NCBI GenBank assembly: GCA_044892525.1
Contig: CM097885.1
Coordinates: forward strand, 235,414,001-235,478,000
Length of the DNA stretch: 64,000 nt
Direction: 5' to 3'
Origin: Schmidtea polychroa
Lineage: Eukaryota
In this document: positions 3,330-64,000 of the stretch, piece by piece
Position numbering within the stretch: the stretch's first letter is position 1
Layout: each line of letters opens with the position of its first letter
The notes under the pieces: generated by a model
Databases searched by the model: none
Seen by the model: the letters and a program-made list of their open reading frames with translations, nothing else
What the model was told of the DNA's origin: nothing
Position numbers and translations under genes: made by a program

Positions 3330-4020
3330 CCAGAAGTTCTTTTCTCGTATCAGAATAACCCTTTCATGTGCTATAAGATGCCTGGAACAATAACCTATCA
3401 CCTTTTTCTTTACCGTCTTCCTTAACCTGCCGTAAAACTATCCCAATTGCTCCAAAATTGAATCTGCATCCAGTATGCACATTACATTTTCCGTCAGAAA
3501 GTCTAATATTGGTGTTTCCCACAGTCTGTATTTCAATGTTTGGAAACTTTCCTCACACTCTTTTGCCAACACTATTTTTTTCATAACCTGTAGTGGCTGA
3601 ATATAAAGGTTCTGAGATCTTTGCTTTTTCTATAATAAACCTTATATAGTAATTAGTCAAACCTAAAAATGATCGAAGTTGTTTTGCATATTTTGGAACC
3701 GCTGCTAACTTGATTTCATTTAATTTTTTGAATTTGTCTAACATCCTTTTGCACTAATGATATGCCCTAAGAATACTAACTCGGTTTTATAAAGGTTGCA
3801 CTTCTCAGGATTTATTCTCAGCCCTATCTGTTGAATTCTGTTGAATTCTGTTATGTGTTTATTATAAATATCAAGATATCTTTGAGGAAAAGAACCAAGT
3901 CCTCCAATATTGCGTGAATCAGCCTTTGAAATGTGGCTAGGGATGTAGGCAATCCAAAATGTAGTCAATTAACTCAAAATTGACTTTCTTTAGCATTAAA
4001 TGCCACCTCTCCTGTGCTAA
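3330..4020 (-). pseudogene. Decayed Gypsy pol fragment (RT C-terminus to RNase H)
   Basis: Minus-strand peptides GLRINPEKCNLYKTELVFLGHIISAKG, KQLRSFLGLTNYY and AIGIVLRQVKEDGKEKVIGYCSR, broken by frameshifts. Confidence 0.85.
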
Positions 4021-16269: not shown

Positions 16270-16900
16270 TAATGGTTGAATGTGACGACACAAATAATAT
16301 ATAGTCAATAGTTCTGTTCATGTGATACAATATCCTCTGTGATCTGTAATGAATAATATGTTCATGTCCCTTGCGTCTGTATGAATTCTTTTTAGAATTT
16401 GTAAATAAGAGAATTTGGTGCTGTGGTCAACGCTATTTTCATTTCTTCGAAGGCTTTATCACAATCCTTAGACCAGATTGTTTTTTCACTAATGTTTACA
16501 TACATGCTTTGTAACGCTCTTGATTTCGTTATATATTCCATAATAAATCCCCGATAATAGTTTCATATACCTAAAATGCTTCTCAAATTTTTTATACGCT
16601 TAAGTCTCTGAAAAGATCTGATAGCCTCAATTTCACTCTGATCTGTTCAAATTCCTTGACTGTTAATTATTTATCCTAAAAACTTTACTTCGCTCTTTAA
16701 TAACTGACACTTTTCCGGGTTAATTCTTAATTTTGTTTCTATTAATTTCTCTAGAACTTTTCTGCACACCTTGTAATGTTCCTCAATTGTTTTCGTTAAA
16801 ATTAAAATATTTAAATACACCATAACTCATTCTTTCCGTAAATCGTTTAATATTTTTGTCATTAGTTTTTAGAATGTACCCGGTACCGCTGCAATGCTAA
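16270..16900 (-). pseudogene. Decayed Gypsy RT fragment
   Basis: Minus strand reads DILILTKTIEEHYKVCRKVLEKLIETKLRINPEKCQLLKSEVKFLG...LRSILG.*NYYRGFI. Confidence 0.85.
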
Positions 16901-45400: not shown

Positions 45401-47562
45401 TTTCCCCAATTGATTCGCTGTTGAATGACTGATCTAAAATTAACAATATCAATAAACTTAAAAGTATGATTAATATTATTTTTCATTTAAAAATATTCAG
45501 ATAAACCGACTCATCAAATCCCTTTATGACTGGGGCGGTAAAGGTCATCATATTAATGAAATAATTATATTTCAATCAAAATGAAACTTACAAATTTATG
45601 AAAATAAAATCAAGTTTTCAATTTTCGTCATTTGAATTTGCATCTATAAAAAATATATAATAAAAATAGATAAAATTTTCGGTATAAAATTATAACGAAA
45701 AGTTCTCATTAAAAGAAATTGTGCATCATAATTCAAATCAGACGGCACTTCCAAAATTAATCATAATTTAAATAAAAACTTAAAATAAAACTCAACATAC
45801 TTAGAATTTCAAGATTCATGTTTTAAACGATTTCATTAGACATAGTAAAATCGATAGTTTAAAAGCATAATTTGTATTTCATATTAGTTATTTAAACAAA
45901 ATTTGAAATATTTTAAATATAATTTATGACTTTTTTATTATTACTTTTTTCTAGAAAGATTTTCATGCAAATATGTGATAATTATTTGGTTTAATAGATT
46001 TTTCTTTTAATATTGAAAGCCATATTTTAATCTAATAACCAATTTAAAATGAAGAGATGAAATTTTCTACAACTTAGCTTTATTCATATACATTTTTCTT
46101 ATAATTAATTTTATTGTATATATTTATAATTAACACAATTGTTGGCATTAAGTCATTATGGTCATTTAATTTTAAATATTGTTTAGATTTATAAAATAAA
46201 AGGGAAATATGTTGTCTATCTGTTGCTACGCCTCTCGATCAATTCTTTTTTGGTACAACGGCAATGTCTGAACCATCACCAATTGACTCCACCCATATGA
46301 TGTGGCGTATATGTAATAATCAGCCATAAAAAATCGACGAATTCTACAGGATAACGTCCATTTTGGAAGTTTGTGGCAGCTTGTATAGTCACTGCTTTCT
46401 TTCAATACTTCGAAAATTTCACTTATTACTAATTTCAAATCAATTCACTTTATTTTCCACTGACTTTTTAATCATTAAATATTTCCCCACCGACCTTTAG
46501 ATTACGCCGGGCTTACCAAAATTTGAGTTAGTTTTAAATGATTCTGTGGGATATTTGAGAATCTAACTCCACGTGCTGTTGATCAAAGAACTGGCTCCAC
46601 GATAGTAACTTTTATTGATATTACACTTTACAAACTGAAGTTTTAATATTTTTACTTGATCTATGGGCAGGTAACCATATGGAAGACCATCTAGAGTAAG
46701 TTGACTAAACGAATTTGATATTACTCAAAAGAACTTTTCTTTTCTTTGATGCTTTTGGTTTTGCATTAATTTCAATTACTTCACTTCTTTCACTTTATTT
46801 ATTTTTTGTCTCAGACCAGAAAATTGACCAGCGATCTACCTTTATCGCTCATTTCTATAATTTTATTCACGGATCTTTTCAGTGATTTTTACTGATTGAG
46901 TAAGTCTTTTGCTTTTGCAGAAATGCTATCATTTGATTTCGATGGAGACTTGCCTAATTTCGATTAATATTGGATCTAAAGTCTAACTACTTGAGACAGA
47001 ATGTTTTGTTAAATACTCTAATTGTATAATGCCACAAGATTTCCTTTTACATATAAATACGAGTGTTGGGCTAAAACGTGGAGTTTCGAAAACTGGAGCG
47101 AATAGAAAAGTAATCCTTGAAAAATAAACGAAATAAAATAAAAATATAAAGTACCATCAAATTCTCGCTAATAAATCAAAAAGGAACAATAAAATATCAA
47201 TAAGAGAATAAGAATAAGTAAAACAAACTAAATAAAACCCAATAAACCCCTTGAGATTTAGAAATAAAGCGATTTAGGACCCAGCAGATGAAATAGAATA
47301 AAATAAGTAAAAAAGTGACAACAAATAAAAGAGAAATTTAAGAAATAAATAAAAAATAAAACTATCTTTAAGTCTAATTAAAACAAAAAATTATATTACA
47401 ATAAAGTAGCAATAAATCCACAGGAAAAATAGGAGGAAAATAATAAAAATAAGAAAATAAATAAAATAATAATAGGAAATAAGTTAAGTCATTAAAATCT
47501 AATATATTATAATAAAAAACATAAAAATAATAATAAATAGTAAAAATACAAACAAGTCGTGT

Positions 47563-47590
47563 CCTGATTGGACGAAAAATAATATATAAG
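47563..47590 (+). promoter_or_regulatory. Candidate LTR promoter: inverted CCAAT (ATTGG 47567-47571) and TATATAAG (47583-47590)
   Basis: Motifs are seen directly after an A-rich U3-like tract. Function is inferred. Confidence 0.35.
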
Positions 47591-49996
47591 GAACGGAAAA
47601 TATCTGTAGATTACCACTTTTAAAAAATTTTTCTACAGGTAAACTTCGGTTCGTTATATACTACCACTTTTAAAAAATTTTTCTACAGACTTGACAGATT
47701 TCGGAACCTTTAATTATCCTACAGCGAACTAGTTCAGAGATTACCAAACCAAACCGAGGAAGAAATATATAGAGGCCAAACTACAAATCCATTCGGGAAA
47801 AATTTTAAATTCAACCGATTTAACTTCAGTTTTCGAAACTCAAGGTATGCCTCGACAGTTGTTTTATTTATGGTTATTAGTTTAATTTAGTTAATCATTA
47901 TAAATATAATAAAACAATTTCTTATAATAAATTTATTTAAATGAAAAGTTGCCTTTCTTCATGGTACCGACGACTGTACCATCTGAGAGCTCCCAGTATG
48001 ATGTGGACGAGTTGGAATTGCACTGCAGTAGAGGACACCACCGTGGAAAGGTTGGTATGCATAAGAAATCACGAACATGCTGAAAAGAGAATGTGATATT
48101 TGTAGAGAGTGATATTTGTCATATTAGAGATCCACCAAGGAGACGATGAGGTTTCGATCATGTAGGAGGAGCAACATCATACTCGGAGATCCAAATGATA
48201 TGGTCGCCGGGTAAATTTTATTTATGCATTTTCTATCATTCAGTTTGATTATTATATTGTTGATTTGATTGAATGGAAAAGAGTTGATTGGTCCCTCATG
48301 ACGGTGCAAGGAGGTGGCAGCAATGAATGCCTTCTTGGGTGTGTCGTGAGGGGTGAAGAAACTCAGTAGGTGGAACATCCAGTTAATAAATGACCGTTCC
48401 TTCATCAAGCGCGATCGTCTGTAGAGCGTACCATCGGTTCATTTAGTTAAATCGAGATTTCCAGTAGATGTAGAGATGATTTGAATTCCGAATGCAGACA
48501 ATTCAGAGCGAGATAGGCAGTGACGTTCGTACAGATTCGATGATAATCCACATAGATAGGAGGAAAATTCTTTTCGTGATATTCAGCCGGTCAATCGACG
48601 TAGTTAGGAAAGAACGGTGTCGACCATAGATTGCAAGTAAATCCAACGATTTTTCGGTGACGCTCTGCGTTTGCAAGGTTCTGTCTGATTTGTGCCGTCA
48701 TGATGTTAGCGGCTACATCCATTGTCGATGTACTCTTACGATTTGATTGTCGTCCTTGAGTCACCAATGCCAGTGATAAAGAATCTCTCGCTGACAGGGA
48801 AGTAAACATCTTGTAGTGAAATTATCAAAATTCTTACTTCGAGCCCGCAGACAGTAGTTGTCAACGATAACGAAATCAGTTGATTTGCATTAGCCTGCGT
48901 AGAGTTAGTCGACAGGAGATATCTGATAACGTCCTGGAGAAGGAGATAACATGTTAACTTTTCTGGGAAAATGTCAAATGAATAAGCTGATAGTCATTGA
49001 TCTGAATTAATATCGTAAAAGGAAATTAGATGATATTGTTGAGCTTACCCAATAATCTATGAAGTTGTCGCCCACTCAGATTGATTAATCTGATTTTTCG
49101 ATTCATCTACGGCTGCTTATTTGAGGAATCTATTACGCAACCGCTAATATTCCGACTTGAGCATGCACATACACACGCACCACAGTCAAATATGCATAGG
49201 GCAGTGTAAAAGGAAATCAACGATTTTGGTGATGTAATAGCGGCATGATGGTATAAATTTCTCTAGAATAGCGAGATAATAGGATGAAGTAAGGGGATGG
49301 ATTTCCCCTACACAACTCGATATACAATAATTTATCATAACAGCATAAACCATCATTCGCGGAGATAGCCAACATACAGTTACAGATACCACCAGGAGTA
49401 ATGACACACCTACACAGTCAATCATAATGCATAATCACAAGTAAACGTTTTCCATGACGACGATTTTCGACGCGTTATTGGAATTAATTAGATGTAGATT
49501 AGAGCTGAATTTTCAACTGATTACACGATCAATTCCATAATTTTGAACGAGATAAAAACATAAATAATCTATTCCGTCGCCGTGAATTATTTCTCTGTAA
49601 TGTTAGGCAGGCCTACCTCGACGAATTGCCATAATGATATCGGCAAAAATTCTTAATTAAAATATACTAATGGGAACAAGGTTGAAGGGGATAAAGTAAA
49701 AGACGGGTTTTACCTGGGAATGGCCCATCCGAAATTAAACTCAAAGGGCGAGGTTTGTGTAGAAAGAATTTTTGGTATACGAATCCCCGTTTCCTTTTCT
49801 TAAATTACACGAATCAGGTGAAGAGATTTGAATGTTTGCAACTGAATGACTGCGTATAGAGATGGATGAAGAAGTGTGTGGGTCATCGTTGGGTGGTATG
49901 TTTGATCAAACTCCAAAACCATGCCCAAAAATTTGATTTTTCTTCACACTGATAGAGGTTTCTTCGAGTAAATATAAACAATGATTGATTTTCTAG

Positions 49997-50758
49997 ATGG
50001 CTACATCGTCCAACAACGCCAAAGAACTTCGCCCGTGTTTTTCTTGTGCGGACAAGAACGCGGATATCGCCCAACTCCACTTATATATCGGGGCTCTCAA
50101 AAAGAGAATTGATCTCTATGAAGGAACGTGGTTCTCCCCGCCACAAATGAAAGAGGAACGCAAGAAAATTCTCCGATTAGAGCATTGCAGGGACAGCCTG
50201 CTAGAGGAAAGCCGTTGTCAGCGGCTCACCATCAAAGCACAGTCAGAAGCCCTCCATAAGGTATATACGGAGGCAGAATTGGCTAAGCGGGTGCGAGAAT
50301 TCCCCGTTCTGGATGGGACGAATGTCTTTCCTCGTCACCACCCGTCTCCTACATCTTCCGGCTCGCACTGCCAGGGGCACGGCTCACAACTGCCGCCCAT
50401 TCCACCCCCGGTGTTGTCATGTCACCAGCCAAAGATAGGTGGACCTACTGATCCCATCGTAGCTCCAATCTTGGTAGCACCAATCGGTACCACGAACACC
50501 GAAAAACCCCCGACTACCCGCAAACGGAAACGGCCAACTCGAGCCGAGAAGAACCAAAAACGCCGAGATGCGATGACAGCACTCGAGACGTCCTTATCGG
50601 CGGCGAAATCAAAAATCCAAGAGATAACGTCCTCCCATTCAATCCCCTCAAAGGAAGTCTTCCGCATTGTTCCAGCTGAGGGCATCAAATACATTGTAGA
50701 TAGCCGATTACCGGTCGACATAGATGAGATACTGGCCGATGGGGATAACTTTGTTTAA
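49997..50758 (+). CDS. Orphan accessory protein, 253 aa (CxxC, coiled coil, Pro-rich linker, basic NLS-like RKRKR)
   Basis: Long intact GC-richer ORF, immediately preceded by the acceptor ttttctag|ATG and followed by an AATAAA signal near 50889. Confidence 0.75.
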   Translation: MATSSNNAKELRPCFSCADKNADIAQLHLYIGALKKRIDLYEGTWFSPPQMKEERKKILRLEHCRDSLLEESRCQRLTIKAQSEALHKVYTEAELAKRVREFPVLDGTNVFPRHHPSPTSSGSHCQGHGSQLPPIPPPVLSCHQPKIGGPTDPIVAPILVAPIGTTNTEKPPTTRKRKRPTRAEKNQKRRDAMTALETSLSAAKSKIQEITSSHSIPSKEVFRIVPAEGIKYIVDSRLPVDIDEILADGDNFV

Positions 50759-51758
50759 TGTGATGTAAAATTGAGCTTGATTTCCTCTTCATTGAGTTGT
50801 AAATTATCTCGTGAATGTTGCTAATGTTATATCTTTTTGACTGTTGTTGATCTGTTAGTAGTAATGATATTTTTATCGTTTCAGTGTCAATAAAATTTTC
50901 TGTTTGATTTTAGTTTTGTCGAGCTTTCATATATTTGTTTGTGCAATTAGAGTAGATGAGATAATGCTGCGGAATGAAGATAATTAAGGTTGAAGGTTGT
51001 TCCTTTGGACCAGGATCAGACCGAGTGACACGCATGTATATGGGTAAGTCCTTCTAAGGCACCGTGGGACCCGAACTGAGAAAGGGTTAGGAGTAGTCCT
51101 AAGGCAGGGGCTCACCTGCTAACCTTTTCCGACCCGTGTGAGCAGCACCAACATGGAACATCACCATGGGCTCATATGTGGGAATATGCAATCAATCATT
51201 TGGAGTATGTGTAGAAAATGTATAACGGAGCCATGATGCTTGATAGGTGTGATGGAAAGGCATGTATAATTTTTTTTTTCTTCTCCACATACGCCAACAT
51301 GATTTTTGGGGGCTCAGCCGGGATCTATATTGATTTGTTTGATTGTCTATTTTTGTGTTATGATGTGTTAGATTAACAATTTAATTAATTATGATAAAAA
51401 CGGAATCGGGGCTGAAATGAATTATAGTGCAATAAAATGATACGAACTGTCTGAGTTTGAAATAGAGCATGTGGTGAATGAAACGAACCTAAATGAGTTG
51501 GAATGAATGTGATGAAGTATGATGAGAAAAGAAAACGGGAATTGGTTATTGTGGTTAATTTTAACTGGTTAAAATAAAAGGGGGGGCGGAGAAAGTAAGT
51601 GATTAAAGCGAAAAGATGAAAGGGGAACTTCAAAGATCGAATAAAATACAAAAGTTAAAACACTAACGCACAGAAGTCAACGAATACTAAATACAAATAT
51701 AATAATATTATTTTTAATACCAGCAGGAACAAAATAATAACAACACATTCATTTAGAT

Positions 51759-52238
51759 ATGTCAGAAGCTAGACAACATCTACAACAGCTAAGCCGGTTC
51801 GTCGAAATAGAAAATGATTCAATAAAAACATTAAGAGAAAAACTGAAACAAATAGAACTGCTAGAACAACAAAGCCACAACGCACCGCTGATATCCAAAC
51901 AAAACTTTCTAACCGACAGATTAGGATCAACAAATACCGATACCGACTTGTCTATTCATTACCAATGGTTTCAGCAACGTCTCGACGACCCCGCTCTGAA
52001 CATCGAATATGTGAGGATACGCGAACGAGTCAAAACTCTGTCTCAGCGGATACGAACATCAATAGTAGAGAAAGCAGCGGCCTTGAGAACTTGTAACATT
52101 TGCAAGATGCGACCTGTCAAAATTCTGATTCTACCTTGTGGGCACCTTAGCCATTGTGACGAATGCGCCGCCGGTTTAATCCGTTGTTCTATGTGCACAT
52201 GTGTAATAAAAGAGAAGCACACCATCTACTTCAGTTAG
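51759..52238 (+). CDS. Coiled-coil plus C-terminal C3HC4 RING (IAP/MDM2-type) putative E3 ligase, 159 aa, no BIR
   Basis: CNIC-x11-PCGH-x3-CDEC-x6-CSMC followed by the hydrophobic tail IYFS-stop, the layout of IAP-type RINGs. Confidence 0.9.
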   Translation: MSEARQHLQQLSRFVEIENDSIKTLREKLKQIELLEQQSHNAPLISKQNFLTDRLGSTNTDTDLSIHYQWFQQRLDDPALNIEYVRIRERVKTLSQRIRTSIVEKAAALRTCNICKMRPVKILILPCGHLSHCDECAAGLIRCSMCTCVIKEKHTIYFS

Positions 52239-52821
52239 GTATGCGATCGTCGCTCGGTGAAGGAAACTGGATGATTAACAATTAGATTAAACATTTTTGA
52301 TATTTTTGTTCTGAATTAATTCGGTAATGTTTTATAATGATAGCATATATTATCTGTAATGTGGAGTAAATAACTAATAAATCCTTTCTGTGTATTCATT
52401 TCATTATACGAAGTTATAAATCGATTTGTGTTGTTATAATTTTCACCATGAAGAAAGGGCATTTTAAAAATTTAAATTGATTATTTAAAGTGGAACTAGT
52501 CCCATCATAGTGCTAAAGGGGGAATAAACCGAGCCACCTTCGGGAGGTACGATATTGGAACCATTTGGGAAGGGACAACCGATCACCCCGAGTAAGAGAT
52601 GTAAGGCGAGGTACCATCGCGAATATTGAAAAGTTTCTGCGGTATGGCTGATCACCATACCAATGTAGAAATGGATCAATGCGATCGTTTTGCGTTTTAA
52701 GCAAGGGGGGAAAGGGGAAACCTTCCAAAGCGGTACAGATTAAGTCGACAAATAAAAGTAAAAATAGGAAGATGACAGTATAGAATAAAGACAGAAAAGG
52801 AACGGAAGCATGCAGAGTTTA

Positions 52822-53265
52822 GAGACATTAAGGCCGAGCTGTTGAAAAGTCCAGCCGGTCAGGGAAATTGAAACTGAGCTGTGAAAAGTCCAGCCAGTCG
52901 GAGATATTAAGGCCGAGCTGTTGAAAAGTCCAGCCGGTCAGGAAAAATTAAAACTGAGCTGTGAAAAGCCCAGCCAGTCGGAGATATTAAGGCCGAGCTG
53001 TTGAAAAGTCCAGCCGGTCAGGAAAAATTAAAACTGAGCTGTGAAAAGTCCAGCCAGTCGGAGATATTAAGGCCGAGCTGTTGAAAAGTCCAGCCGGTCA
53101 GGAAAAATTAAAACTGAGCTGTGAAAAGTCCAGCCAGTTCGGAGATGAAGAAGATTGAGCTGTTGAATAGTGCCAGCCAGTCGTAAGATCGAGTTGTTGA
53201 ATAGTCCAACCGGTCAGGAGAAGAAGATTGAGCTGTTGAAAAGTGCCAGCCAGTCGTAAAGGCCT
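52822..53265 (+). repeat. Tandem array: four 80-bp units (two sub-repeats each) plus three diverged sub-repeats
   Basis: GAGATATTAAGGCC recurs at 52901, 52981 and 53061. The core GAGCTGT(T)GAA(A/T)AGT(G)CCAGCC(A/G)GTC occurs 11 times. Confidence 0.95.
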
Positions 53266-53923
53266 AAAGTAATAGTGAGATAGCATTCAAGCTACAAGTT
53301 GATAACATTTAAATTACTAGTGAGATGGAATATTAAAGCTAGCTAGAAGCAAAGTGAGTTTGAAATATGGTATTTGAATTTAGAAAGGATTAAACGAGCT
53401 CGTGGGAGGTAATAATGAAATTTTTTTTTCAGTGAGAAAGAGAAACTGAAAAGGAAAATGAATTAAAGAGATAATGAAAATAAAGAATAAGTGATGAGTA
53501 AAAGAGGAAGGTGATTAATTAATTAAAAGGGATCCCAGATAAGTAGACAAAGTTCTACAGAATTTTTTTTGGTTTAAACCGGTTAAACGAATTTTGTTTT
53601 GGTTACAGAGTAGAACCAAATAAGGGGAAACAGAGATGAAAGATTAAGTAAAATAGCGGAACCGCGTAAAAGGATTAAGAAAATATGGGAGGTAATAAGC
53701 AGTAACTGACAACGACCTATCGATATTATAAATGCTAACTATAGATAATTTATACGACTATATAGATAATTGTTACTACCCCAAATAGATAATTTAAAAT
53801 CGACGAAAAATATGGGTTGATGGGTAATTATATTCCGCGAAGAAGTGTATGAGGGGAAATGAAGAGAAGTATAACAGAGGCCCTAAAACGGTGTCTGTGC
53901 TTGAATGTGGCAAAAAGGAATGA

Positions 53924-56900
53924 TTGATTCGTGTAAGCAAAGGCAACACGATATCATATTTTCATTGTAGACATCAATCCAACCAAGTCAATTCAGAACC
54001 AGCTCAAGAGGAATCCAGAGAATATACAAACAACCCAGGAAAAGCAATTCAGAACCCGCACAAAGGAAGACAATATCAAAACCGAACTCGACCAATTCAG
54101 CAGACGCTAACCGTAGAAAATCCACGTGAAAAGACAGAAAAGAGTAAAAGGAAAATCACGGATAAACCCAACCTTAGATCTTCAAGTAAGCCAGGAGACG
54201 TATTATTTTCAGGAGACGAATTAGATCAACTCAAAAGAGGACGATCATTTAGGCAGCAGAGAGGAATATCACAAGGAGCAAAAAGACCCCACAAAACACC
54301 GATATACGATCAAGAAAACCCCACAGCCGGACATACGCCCAGTCGATCTAGAAGTAGAGAAAGTCTATCCGATATAACAAACAACCTAACCGGGTCAACA
54401 GAAGAATTATCCGTCCATAATTTAGCTACATCATTAGAAAATTTAAAAGAAATTTTAGCATTTCAAGAACCAATCAAGATGAATGTAGCAAAAACCGACG
54501 AATATAAAGAAAAATTTAGAGGCGAACCGTTCAACGGGAATGCGAACAAGTTGGCAACGTTCATAACCAATTTTGAAGTCTATATCGATGTGTGTGGATG
54601 GACATCCGAAGCAATTAGTAAACGAATGCCTCTGTTTTTGTGCGATAGCGCACTCGAAGTGTATCTGGAAGCAAAAGAAAGAAATACGAAATTAGACAAT
54701 TGGGAAAACATCAAAACATTTTTGAGAAAAACATTCGGAGCCAGCAAACCGATAAATCAAGCGTTAGGTGAACTGGCAAGTAGAAAACAAAGAGCAAACG
54801 AGTCAATTACGTTATACGCAAGTGAATTGCGAAGATTGGCAAAGAAGGCCATGAACGGAAACTTGCCGGAGGAAAACTTAATTGGGTACTTCATAGAAGG
54901 ACTACGCCGAGAAGAGGTAAGGGCCTCGGTGGGATGTCAAATGTGTAAAACACTAGAGGAAGCTATAGATTGGGCCACAAGATGCGAACTACACCTCCCG
55001 GCACAAATGAATGTCATGCAAGAGGAAGGAAGAATCGCAACAGCAGCGGTGAAAACGGAAAATGGAGATAACAATAATCATGAACCAAAGATGAATCAGT
55101 TTATACCAGGTGCGCATCAAATTTTCAAACCACCACAAGGACGATCAAACGGGAATAACAGTGAACGCAACAACTCGAACAATGGGAACAACTTTAATAA
55201 TCGACGAAATATGAACGATAACAAACAATGCCGAACATGCGGTAAACCAGGACATTGGGATAGAGATTGTTACCGAAACGCAAATTGCAATAGGTGTGGA
55301 CGACGAGGACACACGGAAAATATATGCCAATCGAGAGGATGTTTTAACTGCGGGCAACCAGGTCATATCTCAAGAGACTGTCGAGAAAGGAGCCAACATC
55401 AACGACCACCACAGCGAAATAATAACTATGCACCAAATCCGCAACGACAAAGTAATCCTAGTGAGGGAAAGCAAATGAATGTGATGCAAGAAATTTCACA
55501 AATGAAGCAGATGATGCAACAAATGATGAGACCGAGACAAGAGCAAGTACCACAACAAACCCAGAATATACGCATGATGAGAAGCACCGAGAATCTTAAC
55601 AATTATGAAGTGCAACAACATGCACAAGAATGGCAAAGACTACAAGCTGAAGAAGAAAGGATAAAAAGAGAGCGAATTCAGCAGCGACAAGAACAACCAC
55701 TACGAATAAATATGATGAGGATGGTAAAGGAGATAAAGGAGCAATATTGTTACAATTACGGTAAAAATCCAAGAGTTGTACCTATGAGCGAACCAGAGAA
55801 ACCGAAAGAAACAATTCCAGCAGCAAAAAAGGAAAATTCAACAACACCGCTAAAAGGAAATCAGAGAATTCAGAAAATATTTTGGAAAAAGATAAAAGAT
55901 AAAATCGAAAGAGAAAATGAGCAAACAAAAACAGAAGCAGAAGCAGAAAATAACGAAAATGGAAAACAGATTAATCATCTAAAGCATAATATGATACGAG
56001 AATTAGACTCAGAGGAGCTAACGATACTCGAGAACAAAAAGTTAAAGAAAGTACCAAGAATGAAAAATTTACGAATTAATATGATGAGGACAACAAAGAA
56101 GGTGTTGTCAACAGATGACGATGAGGATTATGTGAGTAGCCTTGGTGGAGAAATGTTACAGTTAAATGAAAATATCGACCAACTAAGAGAAAAGATCGGA
56201 GCAGATGAGGATGAAAGAGAAAGCGACGTGACAAGCGAAAGCGAAGACGAGAATATCGAAATGAAATTGAGAAAAGAAAGAGAAGAAGCGATAAAACAAG
56301 TAAAGGAAATACTTCCAGTGGTAGTAAGAAACCAGGAGTTCATCGACCTTATACCATATAAACGCTTCTTACAAAAGATAATGAAACTAGAAAGAAACGA
56401 AAAAGATCTAATACCAAACGAGGAAAAAGCGATAATAAAGAAGTATATGGAAAAAATGAAACAAGCGGAGACAACACGCTATGTAATAAAAATCGGAACG
56501 AGTAAAGGACTCGAGAGAATATGGATAAAAAATGCAGTCACAGACGAGCTTTTTGATTGGATAAGAGAACATTTGGGCAGCTCGAGAAAGAAAGAGTATT
56601 TATATCAATATCAAGGAGAACAAATTAAGCCAGACATGCACCTAATAGATGCATTGATCTGGCCAGGAGAAACTCAAATATTGAAATTGTATAAAGAGAA
56701 GCAACCAGCAAATATTCACGAATGGGCTAAAGACGCCAAGGCCGAGTATGATTTTAACATCAAGCTGAAGCTGGAACAAATAAAACAATGCACCTTGCGA
56801 CGAAATCTAGATAAATTAATCAAACAAATTCAAGAACAAGTCGAAGATAACTGGGATTTACTCATAGCAAGACGAACTCCAGACATGCATGAACTAATGA

Positions 56901-59900
56901 GCCGATTACGAGATACAGAATTGCTCAGGATGAGCGATTGGAGAACCATAAATTTGATCCACAAATATGGAAGGTTGAAAGAAACGCAACCGCAGAAATT
57001 AGAAATAACCATATGGTTACCAAACGAGGAGAAACGACGAATAAAGATGAGTAATCAGAGTACGGTGGATGACTTAGTAACCAAGATAAACCAAGAGATA
57101 ACGGAAAAAGTACGAAGCGAGAGTAGCGACGGGATGATAGATGACGTAGTCATGATGTACGATAAAATAATATTACGGGCCGAAGACGACACCTCGCTAA
57201 GCGAAATGGGAATGTGGGATAATCATCAAATCATCAGAATATTGCCCATGGACGAATTCCGAACAAGAGATATAACATACCAGAAAGAAATACGAGACAG
57301 GATGAAAACGCTATATCAAAAATCAGTAGAGATAATTGAAATTCATCAACAGTGGCTAAAAGAAAAAGAGCTTCAAGGAAAAATAAAGAAACTAAGTGTT
57401 AGATCCTGCAGACGAACCCCATGGGAAAGGACGTGGAATGCGGAAAACAAAGAATGGGAAATCAGGAAAGGGATTTTCGTGGAAACAGACATTGGTGAGA
57501 TAGAAAGCGAATCAGAAGAAGAGGAAGATGAACCTCCAAAATACGAAGAGGACGAAATAGAATCGACATCGGACGACGAAAGCGAAACGGATGTTACATC
57601 AGAAAGTGAAACGGAAACCAGACATATTCATGCGATGAGAAAGAAAGAACGCGAATATGCCGATATGGACAGCGAAGAAGCGATGGAAGCTCGAGAACGA
57701 GAAGAGAAGGAAAGATATAAACAATTAGGTGATATCTTAGCAACGGGAACAAAAAATCAAAAACGTCAAGTAATAGCATTGGCTAACATCATCCTAAAGA
57801 CATCAGAGAATATCCACAATCTAAGAGAAATGGCGAAAGCGATTGAGGAATACAGACAATATAACGAATGGTACCCAGAACAGCTAGAACAAATTATTAG
57901 GAAATGGAGAAACCAAGAATGGGCACAAGATACCCAGGAAAGGTATCGTATCCGAGTCAAGTATCCCGACAAAAGCATTGAGGATACAGAAGTACATCCA
58001 ACAACAAAGATCAGAGAGTTAAAAAAGAAATTAGCATACGAAACTCCATTTCACCTACAACTATTCGGAAAATCGTTGGATGATAATGCAGATGTCGGAA
58101 TAACACCCATGAGATTGGGGGAGATCAATGTATTGACAATGGCAGAAACATTGGGAAAACCGATTAAAAGGAAGAGCAAATCCAGTAAACCTACGAAAGG
58201 TAGCTTGAGTACACCAAGCCCTAACAAAGTGGCAAGTAAAACGAATGAAACCGAGGAAATCGAGGAAATTATATTGGAAGACAGCGATGAAGGAGCTGGA
58301 GAAAGATCACCAATTCTGGTAAGATGGCCGACAGGAGCCGAAATATGGACAACAAGCCAACCGTCAACTAGCTATCAGCAGCCAAATAAGCTGAGTATCG
58401 AGGAGATTATCGATAATACAACAGAAACCGAAACCGACGAACAATTCCAACGACAGAAAGGACCAACGAAAGCAACACCAGAAGGTCAAACGGACAAAAT
58501 AATAGACGAATGGAACGAATGGCTGAGAAACAACGATAGCTCATTGCCAAGAACGGATAACGAGAGAAACCCGAATTATGAAAATACAAGGGAAGCCGGA
58601 ACAATGATGGAAAAACGGGCAAAAGGGAGACCCAAGAAGCAAGGAGAAAAACCGGAATTTAAAACTAGAGAACAACTGAAACAAGAACAAGGACAAGTCA
58701 GATTAGAGAAACTGGATAAAATAGTGTGGGATCTAAAAGAGGCCCAGCCAACTATCGAAAGAGGCGAAAAATGGATACGAGAGCTAGTAAAAGATATGCT
58801 AATAATAACGAACCCACAATTGCGACGGTTATGGCAACGAAAAGTAGCAAGCGTAGACGCCAGACAACTATGGAATACAATATCCGGAATAATTCCGAAA
58901 TTAATCAAAGAGAAGACAAAAACCACTAAAACCGATTGGGAAGAGACAAGAAGAGTAATTGAACAATTAACTTTAAACGCAAACGACGACGAACATCATT
59001 TAGTAGTATTAACGTATCTAATGTACAATTTGATGGGATTAGCAGCGAGGAAAATACCTAACAAACAATTCGCAAATCATGTAGAAATGACCGTTACAAT
59101 CATCGAAAATACAATCGAACCACATATTATCCGCGCCGGTGGGTGGAAAAGACTCATACAAGCGCCACGAAAAAACGAGCAAGAGAGATCAATGCAAATT
59201 CGGTTGAAGAAATTACTAAACAAGCTAGAATGGGAATTGCCATTGAAAGACCCAGCCAGCAGAAAAGCGTCGATTAATTCACTAATGATGACCATGATGA
59301 TATGGATGCTCTGCACCAGTGGAGCCGCGGGATTTACTATTTACGACTGTGACAATTCGATAATAGGAGAAAGATACTCCCTGAGAGATATAGAGGAATG
59401 TAGACAGGCGTCTCCGAATAAATTAGATATAGTAAAAAAGAAAGTCTCCTATCACGTATACCAAGAATCAGATTTCATTAGAACGCAAGCTAGAGAATGC
59501 GTAGTATCGAAGAAAGTGTTGGCATATTACTGTGGACAATACTCATATTCAACCCTCATATTACCTGGATTAGATAAAGAAATAGTACCTATACAACGGG
59601 AAGACTGTAAAGAGCTTTTTAGAACCGGAGCGATGAGAATCAGGGATGGAGTAACAATACACGGACAAAGCGGAATGATCAAGACGGAAAGTATCTATGT
59701 AGCCGGACGAGTAAAATCAACGGATGGATCATGTAACGGAGGCACATATACGATCAGAGGAGAGGTGATATCAGGAGTAGTAGTAATTGAGTCCTACACA
59801 GTGGAGTTGAAGGAATACGAAGCACAATTCGACGCAAACAACTATCAAATGAAAACCAACCCAGCATGCAGAGCTACGGAAAACGTGTGTAGAACGGGGA

Positions 59901-62900
59901 TTTCGACTATAATATATGAAGCTAACACCCAAAAATGCCGACTCCAATTGTTAAAAAGTGCTCTATTCAATGAAGTAAAAGGAGAAATTTACGAAAACGA
60001 GGATGACGATGAAGAGAATGGAAACGTAAGGATGCGAAATGGGAAACCAGTTCCGCCATCCCCCAAAGAAAAGAGACTCACAACCCAAAAAACACCAACG
60101 GCATTAATTACCGATGATCCAGACATCGGCATGAGATTCATTAGAGAAAAAGAGACCACCAAATGTGACAGTATAGTATACTGGACGAACTACGCAGGTA
60201 TCTACATGTCAAGGCAAGTAATAGACCGAGCAGTGGGAAAGGTAGCAACGGAGGACGTAAAATTGTACCTGTATGCCAATAATAAGATGGACTTCTTGTT
60301 CCACCGAGGACAAACGACAATGCAAAAAGTGTATTACGATCTTATACAAAATGACTGTTCATTGAATAAAGAGATACTAAAAACAAAATTAGCCATCGCA
60401 ATAACACACCCAGATAACACAATGCCATCACTCCCGTTACCGGATGGACATTTTGGTAGAATGGTGGGAGAGGTAATGTATACATATGCATGTACCAAGA
60501 CATTTGCGCGACTGCCAAGAAAGCCCACAATTCCACCAGGGAAATGCGCAAACGAGTTGGAAATTAGTTACAAAGGGCGAAACAGATTCGTTCAACCCGT
60601 CACTCGAATCATGAACCCAATTGGATTTTATCCGAACACCTTTAACTGTTCAAATGCATACGGACCGTTATATGAAAAACCCGATGGGAAATGGATAATG
60701 TTACCAGTAAAAACCGAAGTACAAGAGCCTAAAAAGTTTGGACTAATAGAACTCGCAACAGAACAAGATTTCAAACCAATTGATGTGTCAAAAGCAGGTA
60801 TGTACTCACCAGAGGATTTAGAAACGGCACGATTAAACGTATTATTCCCAGCAAGACGGGAATCCATTCTATCGAATATGGTTACCATAACTGGGGGAAC
60901 GAATTTCCAGTCAGGCCCCAATTACGAACTATTATTGTCACCTGATCATTTTCAACAAGCCACGTCAAACATGATGAAAGCAATGTGGGGAAGATTTCTA
61001 GTGTTCGGTCAAATGATGGCAGGAATATTGGGAATCATTCTTATTATCCAGATAGTTAGAGTAATATTGACTCAAATGTTAGCGTGTTTTGATATCTATA
61101 AGAGAGAAAAGAAGGTAAATTGGAAATTGATAGTAGGCTTTCTACCATTTTTGGCAAAAACAATGGTGTTGCACGGTCATTCTAAAGACATACATAGAAT
61201 AAAACGATTGATCAAAATACTGACAAAAATAAAAGGAACTGACGAGGAAGTCGGTAGACGATTTCGGAAAACAATGTATGATGAAGCAACAAGGACGCAA
61301 CTGAAAAAGAACAAACCAAAATTCTTAGACAGATTTAGGAATCGATCAAACAGCAGCGATAGTGATGATGACGACAACGGGAATGACAAATACCCATATC
61401 CAAGTAGAAACCCGAATGAAAAGCCAATAGAAACAGCACCATATTGGGAGAAAGAAAAAACAAATACCTGGATAGCCAACGGAAGTTATATACCACCAGA
61501 TATCGTTGGACAACAAACAGCTTTGACCATGACACAAAATATGTATCCACAGTTACCAAGTCAACCAGGGATGAACTATATGCCGACCCGAAGAACGAAA
61601 AGTGTAGACCAAGCGGACGACGTAAGAACGATAGCAGTGATGAGTTCACCAGGAGGTGCGGCAGTAACAGTCATGATCCAAATCAACGGGAAAGAGACAA
61701 GCGCAATGATAGATACCGGAGCAAACGTATCAGCAATAGCAATAAACCAAATACCCAGTAAATGTTGGAAAGATATCGAACAAACAACTATCCATATTAT
61801 TGCATGCAGTAAAGAAACCGTAGACGTAGTAGGAAGATGGTGGACTACGTTACGATATCAGGATAACGAAATTGAAACGTATCTAGCGGTGATACCCAAA
61901 CTGAGTGAACCATGTATAATCGGAACGGATTTAATGCCGGAATTGTTTAAGGAAGTAGTAATCGATTTAACAACAATGTGTCTAAAAGACAAAATGGGTA
62001 GAATATGCAAGATGAACGCAATAATTAGATGTCCGGAGAAAATAATTGTACCCGCAAAATCACAGATGATATGTCAAATAAAAGTGGATGCAGGAATGGA
62101 AGGAGAAGTCATTTTTGAGCCAAGCAAATCATTCGAAAAACGACGAGAATTACCATTAGCAAGAGAAATAATAACAATAAATGAAGACGGGGAAATACCA
62201 ATTAACATCACAAATTTCGAGGAAGAAGACAAGATCATATATGAAAATGAAAGATTGGGTAGATTGACACCCATGATAGACATCGAATTACCAAAAATCA
62301 CCAACGAAACAACGAAAGCGGACGAATTATGGATAATTGATAGCACCTTGCTAACGGAAAAAGAAAAGGAGAGACTTCAACAATTATTGATAGAATATAA
62401 AGATATATTCGCAATTTCGGATTTAGATTTGGGAGCATGCGATGTTACACTACACGCAATACCATTAATAGACGAAACTCCAATCGCACTACGTCCATAC
62501 AAACTAGCAGAGAAGCAAAAAGAGATAGCCGAAGCAGAAGTACAAAAAATGCTAGATGCACAAGTGATCGAACCAAGTTGTTCGCCATGGCAATTTCCAG
62601 TAGTCATGGTGAAGAAAAAAGACGGTACTCAGAGATTCTGTATCGATTATCGGAAATTAAATGCAGTAACAAAAAGAGACACATACCCTTTACCAGACAT
62701 CAATGAGATGTTACTTATGTTACAGGGGGCCGCATATTTTACATCTTTAGATCTGAAAAGTGGATATTGGCAGATCAAAGTCAAGGAGGAAGACAAAGAG
62801 AAAACAGCATTCACATTGGGCCGAGATCTATACCAATTCAGGAAAATGCCGTTCGGACTGACCAATGCCCCAGCATCATTCCAGAGATGTATGAATTTTG

Positions 62901-64000
62901 TCACACACGGGATCAAGCAGTGTATGGTATATATTGATGATTTATTAATATATTCAGCAACTTTCGAACAACATTTGGAAGATATCAGAAACGTGTTCGT
63001 TCGATTACGACAATGGAAACTGAAACTTAAACCATCCAAATGTGATTGGGCAAAAGAAAAGGTTACGTTCTTAGGACACATAGTGTCAGCAAAAGGCAAA
63101 GAACCAGATCCAAGAAACATAGAAAAAATAAAAACATGTCCAGCACCAAAAACTGTCACCCAAGTTCAAGAATTTCTCGGATTATGCGGATATTATCGAA
63201 AATTCATCAAAAACTATGCAGGTATTGCGAAACCAATACAGGAATTAGTGAAAAAGGATATTTCATTTATTTGGGGTGCAGAACAACAAAAAGCGTTTGA
63301 GACATTGCGAGATAAATTAATTGAAGCCCCAATACTAGTACATCCTGATTTCAAGAAACCGTTCCTATTAGCAACAGATGCAAGTGGATATGCAGCCGGA
63401 GCAATATTAGGACAACTGGATGAAGAAGGAAAAGAAAGAGTGATTGGATACTACAGTAGAACGTTTAAAAAGCACGAGAAAAACTATTCCGTAACCGAGA
63501 GAGAAGCGTTAGCAATCATACAAGCAATTAAACATTTTCGATATTTGTTATGGGGACACGAAATATGTATCACCACGGATCATCAACCATTAGTATGGCT
63601 TGGTCAACACAAAGAAGCTTCAAGTAGATTGATGCGATGGGCAATGCAGTTACAAGAATATTCACCGTTCATAAAATTCAAAGCGGGAAGAGCGAATGCC
63701 AATGCGGATTGTATGTCCAGATTTATCTTTCCAGATTTAGTAGATCACGAAATGCAACGAATATGTCTGATGGTAGCAGAAGATTTAGATTTTTGCCAAT
63801 TACGGAAAGACCAACAAGAGGATACAGAGTTGAAGCAAATCATTGAATATGTGAAAACAGGGAAAGCAGAGGTATATGAGAAAGATCAAAAATTGAAGGA
63901 GCATATGGATAAACATCGACATCGATATATTATCGAGAAAGATTGGTTATTGATAATGGATGGCGAGAAAAGACTGATGTGCATTCCCGAGAATAGACGT
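53924..64000 (+). CDS. Single Gag-accessory-Env-Pol polyprotein, at least 3359 codons, 3' partial; first in-frame ATG at 54479
   Basis: Frame +2 is open from the TGA at 53921 to the window end. I translated most of it by hand and found no stop, and the track lists no closed frame +2 ORF here. Capsid, CCHC, DTG, YIDD and TDAS motifs all fall in this frame. Confidence 0.93.
   Translation, partial: [3359 protein letters not shown]
54479..55020 (+). other. Gag capsid domain
   Basis: [24 protein letters not shown]...[12 protein letters not shown]...[20 protein letters not shown]...YFIEGLR. Confidence 0.9.
55229..55381 (+). other. Nucleocapsid with three CCHC zinc knuckles
   Basis: [28 protein letters not shown] and [14 protein letters not shown]. 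Confidence 0.97.
56474..56700 (+). other. Ubiquitin/SUMO-like domain 1 (putative)
   Basis: [18 protein letters not shown]...[12 protein letters not shown]...[21 protein letters not shown], a beta-grasp-like pattern. Confidence 0.5.
56996..57250 (+). other. Ubiquitin-like domain 2 (putative)
   Basis: [32 protein letters not shown]...[29 protein letters not shown]. Confidence 0.65.
57941..58145 (+). other. Ubiquitin-like domain 3 (putative)
   Basis: [30 protein letters not shown]...[15 protein letters not shown]. Confidence 0.65.
58690..59170 (+). other. Bcl-2-like helical domain (putative)
   Basis: VIEQL...LVVLTYL followed by [15 protein letters not shown], a BH2-like GGW at BH1-BH2 spacing. 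Confidence 0.5.
59273..61620 (+). other. Internal signal peptide, chuvirus-like envelope glycoprotein ectodomain, TM anchor (about 60995-61090) and cytoplasmic tail
   Basis: [24 protein letters not shown]...YSLRDIEEC...YCGQYSYS...GSCNGG...LYANNKMDF...DCSLNKEIL...[10 protein letters not shown]...FVQPVTRI...AGMYSPEDL...[22 protein letters not shown], with 14 ectodomain Cys. Confidence 0.85.
61631..62023 (+). other. Aspartic protease
   Basis: [17 protein letters not shown] (DTG 61712-61720) and CIIGTDLM. Confidence 0.95.
62380..63200 (+). other. Reverse transcriptase
   Basis: [51 protein letters not shown] and YIDD (62930-62941). Confidence 0.98.
63355..63730 (+). other. RNase H (Ty3 type), followed by the start of integrase
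   Basis: [18 protein letters not shown]...VIGYYSR...[12 protein letters not shown]...ITTDHQPL...NANADCMSR. The window ends at [10 protein letters not shown], just before the expected integrase HHCC. Confidence 0.95.

What the first reader, a model, noticed from the sequence alone, without database searches (positions are those of the whole stretch)
59273..61620. Chuvirus-like envelope glycoprotein encoded in frame BETWEEN Gag and protease
Seen: signal peptide, an ectodomain of about 550 aa with 14 Cys, a TM helix and a cytoplasmic tail, all in the same frame as upstream Gag and downstream PR-RT-RH. The Cys and motif pattern (YDC, SL-x-D-x-x-x-C, CG-x-x-S-x-S, G-x-C-x-G, Y-x-N-x-K, C-x-L, GE-x-x-Y-x-x-x-C, P-x-TRI, G-x-Y, W-x-x-F-x-x-FG) matches my recollection of chuviral/gB-like class III fusogens. 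A charged loop with KEKR (60065-60076) could be a convertase site. Known: env genes of retroviruses and errantiviruses, and captured fusogens of BEL/Pao elements, normally lie 3' of pol. A gag-env-pol single-ORF order in a Gypsy element is not one I know to be described. It would represent an independent envelope capture.
Basis: partly seen in the sequence, partly recalled or inferred. Interest (0 to 1): 0.95.

Follow-up and report, generated by a model that had tools for sequence, protein, structure and literature searches.

The report
Chuvirus-like envelope inside gypsy polyprotein
A large retrovirus-like mobile element carries a membrane-fusion glycoprotein gene of chuvirus type in frame between its capsid and enzyme genes; the feature is real, but the layout has been published and is shared by a whole clade of related elements.

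Summary
A single stop-free frame runs from window 53924 to the window end (3359 codons). In order it holds Gag (capsid plus three CCHC knuckles), a spacer of about 1270 aa, a signal peptide, a 554-aa ectodomain with 14 Cys, the only strong TM helix of the frame, a 190-aa tail, and then PR-RT-RNase H.

The env part matches Pfam PF24664 (Monjiviricetes_fusion) at E 6e-73. By sequence it matches named chuvirus glycoproteins (Tacheng Tick Virus 4, E 7e-36). By predicted fold (pLDDT 87) it matches chu-like virus G (Foldseek E 1e-36, TM up to 0.74) and herpesvirus gB (E 1e-13).

It is not an assembly chimera. At least 15 diverged relatives (27-40% identity in env) keep all 14 Cys, an internal signal segment and a TM. 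In 10 relatives checked with Pfam, env sits directly upstream of PR/RT in the same ORF.

The novelty claim fails. GAG-ENV-POL Ty3/gypsy elements with class III Env are described in Nematoda (Sacco 2022) and in Bryozoa and Platyhelminthes (eLife 2026). The KEKR convertase idea is not supported (0/14 relatives).

Possibly new: the size (a relative's unit is 16.7 kb), the long spacer, and the accessory RING and RNase_T ORFs. The host was not identified.

The parts
53924..64000 (+). Single open frame of the element (Gag-spacer-Env-PR-RT-RNase H), cut by the window end before integrase. No stop or frameshift occurs in the part held. The first in-frame ATG is codon 186, so the start is unresolved.
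54527..54979 (+). Gag capsid-like domain (Retrotrans_gag / Ty3_capsid), aa 202-352
   Evidence: BLASTP to gag parts of P0001, P0003 and P0004
55214..55393 (+). Nucleocapsid with three CCHC zinc knuckles
55454..59278 (+). Spacer of about 1270 aa, rich in K/E, with no family assigned. Weak hints only: PI3K_rbd/beta-grasp at E 0.019 and Bcl-2 at E 0.09. The last ~100 aa before the signal peptide are conserved in P0005 and P0009.
59279..59326 (+). Internal signal-peptide-like segment (aa 1786-1801), ending in small residues just before the ectodomain
59327..60988 (+). Env ectodomain, 554 aa, 14 conserved Cys, one N-x-S/T sequon. Class III fold with a 48-residue central helix.
60065..60076 (+). KEKR in a charged, low-confidence loop. 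Not conserved and not a canonical furin motif.
60989..61099 (+). Transmembrane anchor, the only strong TM segment in the 3359-aa frame
61100..61669 (+). Cytoplasmic tail / linker to protease (190 aa)
61670..61945 (+). Retropepsin (RVP), with D-T-G at aa 2597
62609..63085 (+). Reverse transcriptase (RVT_1), with Y-x-D-D at aa 3003
63272..63661 (+). RNase H (RT_RNaseH / RT_RNaseH_2)
52822..53259 (+). Tandem repeats of about 80 bp upstream of gag, in the LTR or leader region. Relatives L003-L006 also have tandem arrays upstream of gag.
51759..52238 (+). 159-aa RING-finger ORF, homologous to the last ORF of relative L004. Probably the 3' accessory gene of a neighbouring or tandem copy, or a product of an LTR-mediated assembly join.

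Best explanation
The segment is the envelope gene of a large Ty3/gypsy-type (Metaviridae-like) endogenous retrovirus-like element. It encodes a class III fusion glycoprotein of the chuvirus (Jingchuvirales) G family. An ancestor of a whole clade of such elements captured it and fixed it in frame between gag and pol.

Shown:
- the domain order
- the reading-frame continuity
- the family and fold of Env
- conservation of the layout, the 14 Cys, the internal signal segment and the TM anchor across the clade

Inferred mechanism:
1. The genomic RNA is translated as one Gag-spacer-Env-Pol polyprotein.
2. When the internal signal segment emerges, the ribosome is targeted to the ER.
3. The ectodomain is translocated, and signal peptidase cuts after the small-residue end of the signal segment, freeing Gag-spacer in the cytosol.
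4. The TM helix stops transfer, so the tail and PR-RT-RH-IN are made on the cytosolic face, tethered to the membrane.
5. The element's own aspartic protease then releases Pol and trims Gag, possibly at the recurring x-N-[VM]-M-[QR] motifs.
6. Env trimers in the membrane give particles a fusion protein that needs no convertase priming.

This is the topology logic used by polyproteins of several enveloped RNA viruses, here applied to a retroelement.

The confidence of 0.7 is a blend: about 0.95 for the identity and layout, about 0.5 for the polyprotein-threading mechanism.
For: - Frame and domains.
- Env family: PF24664 at 246 bits. There are more than 1000 HMMER hits, the standalone tier being 620-690-aa proteins at 22-27% identity. 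Clusters in that tier are named Tacheng Tick Virus 4 glycoprotein, Chuviridae sp., Yichun mivirus and Yanbian Chuvi tick virus 1.
- Fold: AF2 model with pLDDT 87.2, pTM 0.72 and a central helix at 313-360. Foldseek top viral hits are chu-related virus G at E 2.5e-36 to 5e-35, with TMq up to 0.74. The top 50 PDB hits are all herpesvirus gB, mainly postfusion forms, at E ~1e-13. The profile search against PDB sequences returns only gB (33 of 33, E >= 0.015).
- Clade layout: env is directly followed by PR/RT in the same ORF in P0001, P0003, P0004, P0005, P0006, P0010, P0016 and P0155 and in P0014 and P0226. Gag similarity in the same ORF is seen in P0001, P0003 and P0004.
- Conservation: all 14 ectodomain Cys are conserved in 15 of 15 members and sit in columns >=90% conserved across 68 family members.
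- Internal signal: 15 of 15 members have a hydrophobic segment just before the ectodomain and a TM after it. Only 5 of 14 relatives have a Met within 12 aa upstream. Where env-pol is its own ORF, the signal still lies 130-190 aa inside it.
- No furin-type motif anywhere in env.
- Candidate protease motifs flank the nucleocapsid.
- Homogeneous codon composition.
Against: - No transcript or protein data exist for this element, so translation as one polyprotein and signal-peptidase cleavage are inference.
- The window copy has a cluster of Met codons right at the signal segment, which would also suit separate initiation.
- One polyprotein gives equimolar Gag, Env and Pol, which is unusual for retroelements.
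- The ectodomain has only one N-glycosylation sequon.
- Fusion loops were not examined.
- The 3' half of the element (IN, any accessory ORFs, the 3' LTR) lies outside the window, so completeness and age of this copy are unknown.
- The start codon is unresolved.
Confidence: 0.7

Rival explanations
1. Env is expressed from a spliced or trans-spliced subgenomic mRNA, as in retroviruses. The continuous frame then only reflects the absence of a stop codon, not how Env is made.
For: The window copy has several Met codons at the start of the signal segment. In the single-ORF gypsy element Cer1 an accessory protein is made by splicing within the long ORF (PMC10309623). In L004 gag is a separate ORF from env-pol.
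Against: In 9 of 14 relatives no Met lies within 12 aa upstream of the signal segment. In env-pol ORFs the signal still lies 130-190 aa internal. No stop separates env from PR in any intact relative, so Env would still be made fused to Pol.
Confidence: 0.3
2. The copy is an inert genomic fossil, or Env has been co-opted by the host. On this view the intact frame only reflects a recent insertion, and Env no longer serves element spread.
For: Only one copy is present in the 64-kb window. No close (>50% identity) protein was found in the public protein collections. There is no in-frame ATG in the first 185 codons.
Against: More than 10 kb is free of stops. All 14 Cys, the signal segment and the TM are kept across relatives at 27-40% identity, which indicates long-term purifying selection on Env within mobile elements that also keep PR-RT-RH-IN.
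Confidence: 0.15
3. The gag-env-pol order is an assembly chimera, or a chuvirus EVE nested in a gypsy element.
For: The scaffold has seven N gaps elsewhere. A RING ORF typical of the 3' end of relatives sits upstream of gag, so some LTR-mediated misjoin upstream cannot be excluded.
Against: There are no N runs or frame changes within 53924-64000. The same order and frame occur in independent metagenome assemblies from at least three samples. Codon composition is homogeneous.
Confidence: 0.02

Closest known systems
GAG-ENV-POL Ty3/gypsy elements with gB-type (class III) Env: nematode 'non-canonical ERVs' (Sacco et al. 2022, J Gen Virol 103:1739) and the Nematoda/Bryozoa/Platyhelminthes elements of PMC13524379 (eLife 2026)
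   Same: Env lies between gag and pol of a Ty3/gypsy element. Env is a class III fusogen derived from a negative-strand RNA virus glycoprotein, as the title of Sacco et al. states. My recollection of that abstract, not verified here, is that the nematode elements have one continuous gag-env-pro-pol ORF.
   Different: The host here is unknown. The element is very large: a relative's unit is 16.7 kb, and gag-to-RNase H here already spans 10 kb. The eLife pipeline discarded LTR pairs more than 14 kb apart and looked for gag within 5 kb of env, so this lineage may not have been sampled. This copy has a 1270-aa spacer. Relatives have 1-3 protease domains and RNase_T and RING ORFs.
Jingchuvirales (Chuviridae) glycoprotein G, Pfam PF24664
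   Same: The same protein family by HMM, with the same 14-Cys framework, the same predicted fold and type I topology.
   Different: Only 22-27% identity. It is encoded in a reverse-transcribing element, not an RNA virus genome. It has no start or stop codon of its own.
Anakin: mosquito BEL/Pao elements with a captured chuvirus G (Dezordi et al. 2020, PMC7642597), and arthropod gypsy elements with the same G (PMC13524379)
   Same: A chuvirus-type G captured by an LTR retroelement.
   Different: I did not check the env position in those elements (a separate env ORF 3' of pol is my assumption). Anakin is Belpaoviridae, whereas this pol gives only Ty3/gypsy-type Pfam hits.
Herpesvirus gB (class III fusogen)
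   Same: Overall multi-domain fold with a central helix. Every one of the top 50 PDB matches listed is gB.
   Different: About 10% identity and TM only 0.40-0.44. Sequence-profile similarity is marginal (E 0.015).
Insect errantiviruses (gypsy, ZAM, Idefix)
   Same: Ty3/gypsy elements with an env gene.
   Different: Their order is gag-pol-env, and their env is a class I F-type protein of baculovirus origin expressed from a spliced mRNA (established knowledge; PMC13524379).

Membership tests
Pfam PF24664 Monjiviricetes_fusion / chuvirus-like G | HMM score above the curated gathering cut-off | tested here: met
   246.3 bits against 27; E 6.1e-73
Pfam PF24664 Monjiviricetes_fusion / chuvirus-like G | Conserved cysteine framework of the ectodomain | tested here: met
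   All 14 Cys sit in columns >=90% conserved among 68 members and are present in 15/15 of the retroelement clade
Pfam PF24664 Monjiviricetes_fusion / chuvirus-like G | Encoded as a separate gene of a negative-strand RNA virus | tested here: not met
   It is embedded in frame in a gag-PR-RT-RH polyprotein
Class III viral fusion proteins (gB / rhabdovirus G / gp64) | Multi-domain beta-rich fold with a long central helix | tested here: met
   Model pLDDT 87, helix at 313-360. gB matches at E ~1e-13, probability 1.0. Chu-like G matches at E 1e-36, TM up to 0.74
Class III viral fusion proteins (gB / rhabdovirus G / gp64) | Type I topology: N-terminal signal, single C-terminal TM anchor | tested here: met
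   Signal-like segment at aa 1786-1801 and TM at aa 2356-2392. No dedicated signal-peptide predictor was available
Class III viral fusion proteins (gB / rhabdovirus G / gp64) | Two internal hydrophobic fusion loops at the tip of domain I | not tested
   Model coordinates cannot be inspected with these tools
Class III viral fusion proteins (gB / rhabdovirus G / gp64) | Membrane fusion activity | not testable with these tools
   Functional property; no data
Ty3/gypsy (Metaviridae) | Gag with capsid and CCHC nucleocapsid; pol order PR-RT-RH-IN | tested here: met
   Gag, three knuckles and PR-RT-RH are in the window. IN lies beyond the window end but follows RH in relatives
Ty3/gypsy (Metaviridae) | Long terminal repeats, PBS, PPT, target-site duplication | tested here: inconclusive
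   The 3' end is outside the window. No second LTR copy is in the window. Relative L001 has terminal direct repeats 16,739 bp apart. No tRNA genes are in the window, and no PBS match was attempted
GAG-ENV-POL gypsy elements (Sacco 2022; PMC13524379) | Class III env placed between gag and pol | tested here: met
GAG-ENV-POL gypsy elements (Sacco 2022; PMC13524379) | Host in Nematoda, Bryozoa or Platyhelminthes; pol in the published clades | not testable with these tools
   The host was not identified. The published sequences are not held
Belpaoviridae 'Anakin' (chuvirus G in BEL/Pao) | BEL/Pao-type pol | tested here: not met
   Only Ty3/gypsy-type domains were found (RVP, RVT_1, RT_RNaseH, RT_RNaseH_2), with no BEL/Pao families. 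Nearest pol homologues are gypsy-type
Errantivirus (insect gypsy group) | gag-pol-env order with F-type class I env | tested here: not met
   The order is gag-env-pol and env is class III

The most novel reading that the evidence does not exclude
This copy and its metagenomic relatives may form a so-far undescribed lineage of giant (about 17 kb or more) gag-env-pol metaviruses. In this lineage the whole particle, envelope and replication machinery would be made as one membrane-threaded polyprotein through an internal signal peptide. The lineage would have added host-manipulating modules: multiple proteases, RNase_T exonuclease and RING E3 ORFs, and perhaps ubiquitin-like and Bcl-2-like domains in the spacer. 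Earlier surveys would have missed it because of their size filters.
Probability: 0.3. Interest if true: 0.65.

Novelty: new member of a known kind. Interest (0 to 1): 0.42.

Why it matters
Envelope capture is the step that can turn an intracellular retrotransposon into an infectious agent. This copy adds a well-preserved example of the rarer in-frame gag-env-pol solution: more than 10 kb of intact frame.

Together with 15 diverged relatives, it shows that the signal segment is internal to the polyprotein across the clade. That makes a concrete, testable question of how a retroelement polyprotein is threaded through the ER membrane and processed.

It also points to unusually large relatives with accessory exonuclease and RING genes, which existing surveys may have filtered out.

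It does not change the picture that such captures are ancient and recurrent, which is already published.

Tried and rejected
Searches that found nothing or could not be completed:
- Word-indexed protein search with env alone: no hit. Relatives appeared only when the candidate length was set by the whole polyprotein.
- IMG/VR scan with env: no relative.
- PDB sequence search with the single env sequence: nothing meaningful.
- Rfam and tRNA scans of the window: nothing.
- Sacco et al. 2022 is not held, and the eLife supplements are not held. Direct comparison with the published elements was therefore impossible.

Host identification failed:
- The pol search returned only 34-49% identical gypsy pols from many eukaryotes.
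- The nearest relatives come from ENA metagenomes without names. One was mis-binned as a Flavobacteriaceae MAG.
- The window background is 22-27% GC, which does not name a host.

Spacer:
- No internal repeats by BLAST.
- No similarity to relatives' spacers, apart from about 100 aa before the signal segment.
- The single-sequence AF2 model had pLDDT 37.6, too poor for a fold search, so the last fold-search job was not used.

Rejected ideas:
- Convertase site: rejected.
- Chimera: rejected.
- The upstream block 46000-53923 has no similarity to relatives except the RING ORF.

- In my working notes (thinking), not in any tool call or result, I wrote from memory a short spliced-leader sequence, telomere repeat units and a short Bcl-2 motif fragment. 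None was used.
- I also looked at the bases around the upstream bound of the open frame and discussed them in my thinking. No such detail is given here.
- The consensus line printed by the alignment tool was not used.


Full report
**What is in the window**

The + strand holds one stop-free frame from 53924 to the window end at 64000 (3359 codons). Nothing else in the window is open for more than 284 codons.

The translation and Pfam give this order:
- a 185-codon N-terminal stretch without any ATG
- a capsid-like Gag domain (Retrotrans_gag / Ty3_capsid, aa 202-352)
- three CCHC zinc knuckles (aa ~433-488)
- a K/E-rich spacer of about 1270 aa with no family assignment
- PF24664 Monjiviricetes_fusion, 'viral fusion glycoprotein'
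- retropepsin (aa 2583-2674, D-T-G at aa 2597)
- reverse transcriptase (aa 2896-3054, Y-x-D-D at aa 3003)
- RNase H (aa 3117-3246)

Integrase lies beyond the window. The surrounding DNA is 22-27% GC, while the element is about 39% GC and A-rich on its coding strand.

**Check of the observation**

- A signal-like hydrophobic segment lies at aa 1786-1801 (nt 59279-59326). It follows basic residues and ends in small residues.
- The ectodomain is 554 aa with exactly 14 Cys and a single N-x-S/T sequon.
- The only strong transmembrane segment of the whole 3359-aa frame is aa 2356-2392 (nt 60989-61099).
- A 190-aa tail leads into the protease.
- KEKR is at 60065-60076.
- Third-position composition of env resembles that of gag, spacer and pol. 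There is therefore no compositional sign of a recent insertion or a misjoin.

**Identity of the glycoprotein**

- Pfam PF24664 scores 246 bits against a cut-off of 27.
- An exhaustive HMMER search found more than 1000 homologues, 47 of them below 1e-30.
- The first tier (29-47% identity) is env embedded in long retroelement ORFs.
- The next tier consists of 620-690-aa standalone proteins at 22-27% identity. Their clusters carry names such as glycoprotein of Tacheng Tick Virus 4 (E 7e-36), Chuviridae sp., Yichun mivirus, Yanbian Chuvi tick virus 1 and Taiga tick nigecruvirus. One cluster is an endogenous copy in the beetle Zophobas morio.
- An AlphaFold2 model of the ectodomain, built on a 68-sequence alignment, is confident: pLDDT 87.2, pTM 0.72, with a 48-residue central helix.
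- Foldseek against viral models puts chu-related virus glycoproteins first (E 2.5e-36 to 5e-35, TM up to 0.74). Other Monjiviricetes G proteins and herpesvirus gB follow.
- Against the PDB, the top 50 matches are all herpesvirus gB, mainly postfusion forms, at E about 1e-13.
- A sequence profile of the family hits only gB in the PDB, and weakly (33 of 33, best E 0.015).

**Is the gag-env-pol layout real and shared?**

Yes.
- A search in which candidate length followed the whole polyprotein found four metagenomic proteins of 2099-3865 aa with 38-40% identity in env and the same fusion.
- Pfam shows PF24664 directly followed by protease and RT-RH-IN in P0001, P0004, P0006, P0010, P0016 and P0155, and by protease in P0003 and P0005.
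- P0014 and P0226 show the same from precomputed domains.
- Gag similarity lies in the same ORF in P0001, P0003 and P0004.
- The contigs come from at least three different ENA assemblies.
- In some relatives the coding region is split into two ORFs (L003, L004) or six or more (L006). I cannot tell decay from long-read assembly error.
- Across 15 members (27-40% identity), all 14 ectodomain Cys are present in 15 of 15. All 15 have a hydrophobic segment just before the ectodomain and a TM after it.

The capture therefore predates this copy and has been kept under constraint. The 'assembly chimera' refutation test fails.

**How it probably works**

The signal segment is internal in every member.
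- In 9 of 14 relatives there is no Met within 12 residues upstream.
- Where env-pol is its own ORF, the signal still lies 130-190 aa inside it.
- No stop separates env from the protease in any intact member.

The simplest reading is a polyprotein threaded through the ER membrane:
1. Gag-spacer is made in the cytosol.
2. The internal signal targets the ribosome to the ER.
3. Signal peptidase separates Gag-spacer from Env.
4. The TM helix stops transfer.
5. The tail and Pol are made on the cytosolic side and are released by the element's protease.

Recurrent short motifs are candidates for protease sites. One seven-residue motif occurs twice, once on each side of the nucleocapsid. A related motif occurs twice more, with looser variants elsewhere in the spacer.

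All of this is inference, since there are no transcript or protein data. The main rival is a spliced env mRNA. The window copy has Met codons at the signal segment, and Cer1, a single-ORF gypsy element, makes an accessory protein by splicing inside its ORF (PMC10309623).

The convertase idea is not supported. KEKR lies in a low-confidence charged loop, no relative has a dibasic pair there, and no R-x-K/R-R occurs anywhere in env of the 15 members.

**Comparison with what is known**

- The eLife 2026 survey (PMC13524379) states that Ty3/gypsy elements in Nematoda, Bryozoa and Platyhelminthes carry gB-type Env in the order GAG-ENV-POL.
- It credits Sacco et al. [quoted passage not shown]
- It also notes chuvirus-like G next to gypsy pol in several arthropod orders.
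- Chuvirus G capture by mosquito BEL/Pao elements (Anakin) was described in 2020 (PMC7642597).
- My recollection, which I could not verify because the paper is not held, is that Sacco et al. describe a continuous gag-env-pro-pol ORF.

The arrangement is therefore not new.

**What may be new is the scale**

- A relative's unit is 16.7 kb between terminal direct repeats.
- Relatives reach 4844-aa ORFs with up to three protease domains, ankyrin repeats, and RNase_T and RING ORFs 3' of pol.
- This copy has the longest gag-env spacer: about 1270 aa, against roughly 400-700 aa in three relatives.
- The eLife pipeline excluded LTR pairs more than 14 kb apart and sought gag within 5 kb of env, so such elements could have escaped it.

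I could not place this copy in the published clades or name its host.

**Verdict**

The feature is real, well preserved and correctly recognised. The interpretation as a chuvirus-like class III envelope in frame between Gag and protease is right. The claims of an undescribed order, an independent capture and a convertase site are not.

I file it as a new member of a known kind. There is a moderate chance that it represents a distinct giant lineage worth describing.

Noticed in passing
window 51759-52238 (+), with L004:22895-23398: A 159-aa ORF with a C-terminal RING finger (PF13920) lies 1.7 kb upstream of the gag frame. It is homologous (27% over 124 aa, E 1e-13) to the last ORF of relative L004, which there sits 3' of pol after an RNase_T ORF. 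This suggests the 3' end of a tandem or truncated neighbour copy sharing the LTR, or an LTR-mediated assembly join.
   Followed up: partly
window 52822-53259 (+); also L003:124-1553, L004:942-1081, L005:50-701, L006:2330-5336: Tandem repeat arrays (about 80-bp units in the window, 79-89% identical) lie upstream of gag in this element and in its relatives. They are probably in the LTR or leader. A purine-rich tract lies at about 52699-52722.
   Followed up: partly
window 55454-59278 (+), ORF aa 511-1785: The gag-env spacer is K/E-rich and mostly predicted helical or disordered (single-sequence model, pLDDT 37.6). Pfam hints are weak and below cut-off: a ubiquitin-like PI3K_rbd (E 0.019, aa ~1019-1065) and Bcl-2 (E 0.09, aa 1691-1741). 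About 100 aa just before the signal segment are conserved in P0005 (phmmer 1e-7) and P0009.
   Followed up: partly
window ORF aa 363, 519, 596, 689, 719, 1236 (nt ~55010-57640): Recurring short motifs of the type x-N-[VM]-M-[QR] occur in the frame. One seven-residue motif occurs twice, exactly flanking the zinc-knuckle region. These are candidate cleavage sites for the element's protease.
   Followed up: no
window 53924-54478 (+): The frame is open for 185 codons upstream of the first in-frame ATG and reads like a disordered basic protein. Relatives start only about 45-60 aa before the capsid-like domain. The true start (non-AUG, an upstream exon or a lost start) is unresolved.
   Followed up: no
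L001:12411-15688; L004:21702-22841; L005:9547-11622: Relatives carry one or two ORFs with an RNase_T-type exonuclease domain 3' of pol. This recalls the DEDDy exonuclease ORF3 reported in bdelloid rotifer LTR elements (PMC5408684, seen). Relatives also have 2-3 aspartic protease domains, ankyrin repeats and a C2H2 finger inside the polyprotein.
   Followed up: partly
window 39207-40052 (-): A 281-aa ORF matching the piggyBac-type transposase domain DDE_Tnp_1_7 (E 4e-45). It is a fragment of a DNA transposon.
   Followed up: no
window 3589-4009 (-) and 16416-16811 (-): Short degenerate reverse-transcriptase-like stretches, detected by tblastx against the relatives' pol regions. They are remnants of other LTR retroelements.
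   Followed up: no
window 48000-51700 (+), incl. ORF 49997-50758: A block of raised GC (0.39-0.46) begins near 48000, well before gag. It contains a 253-aa ORF with no Pfam match and no similarity to the relatives. Whether it belongs to the element is unknown.
   Followed up: partly
P0010 (NCBI HBK71150.1): A 2627-aa env-PR-RT-RH-IN polyprotein of this clade is deposited as a hypothetical protein of a Flavobacteriaceae MAG. This is almost certainly a eukaryotic contig mis-binned into a bacterial genome.
   Followed up: no
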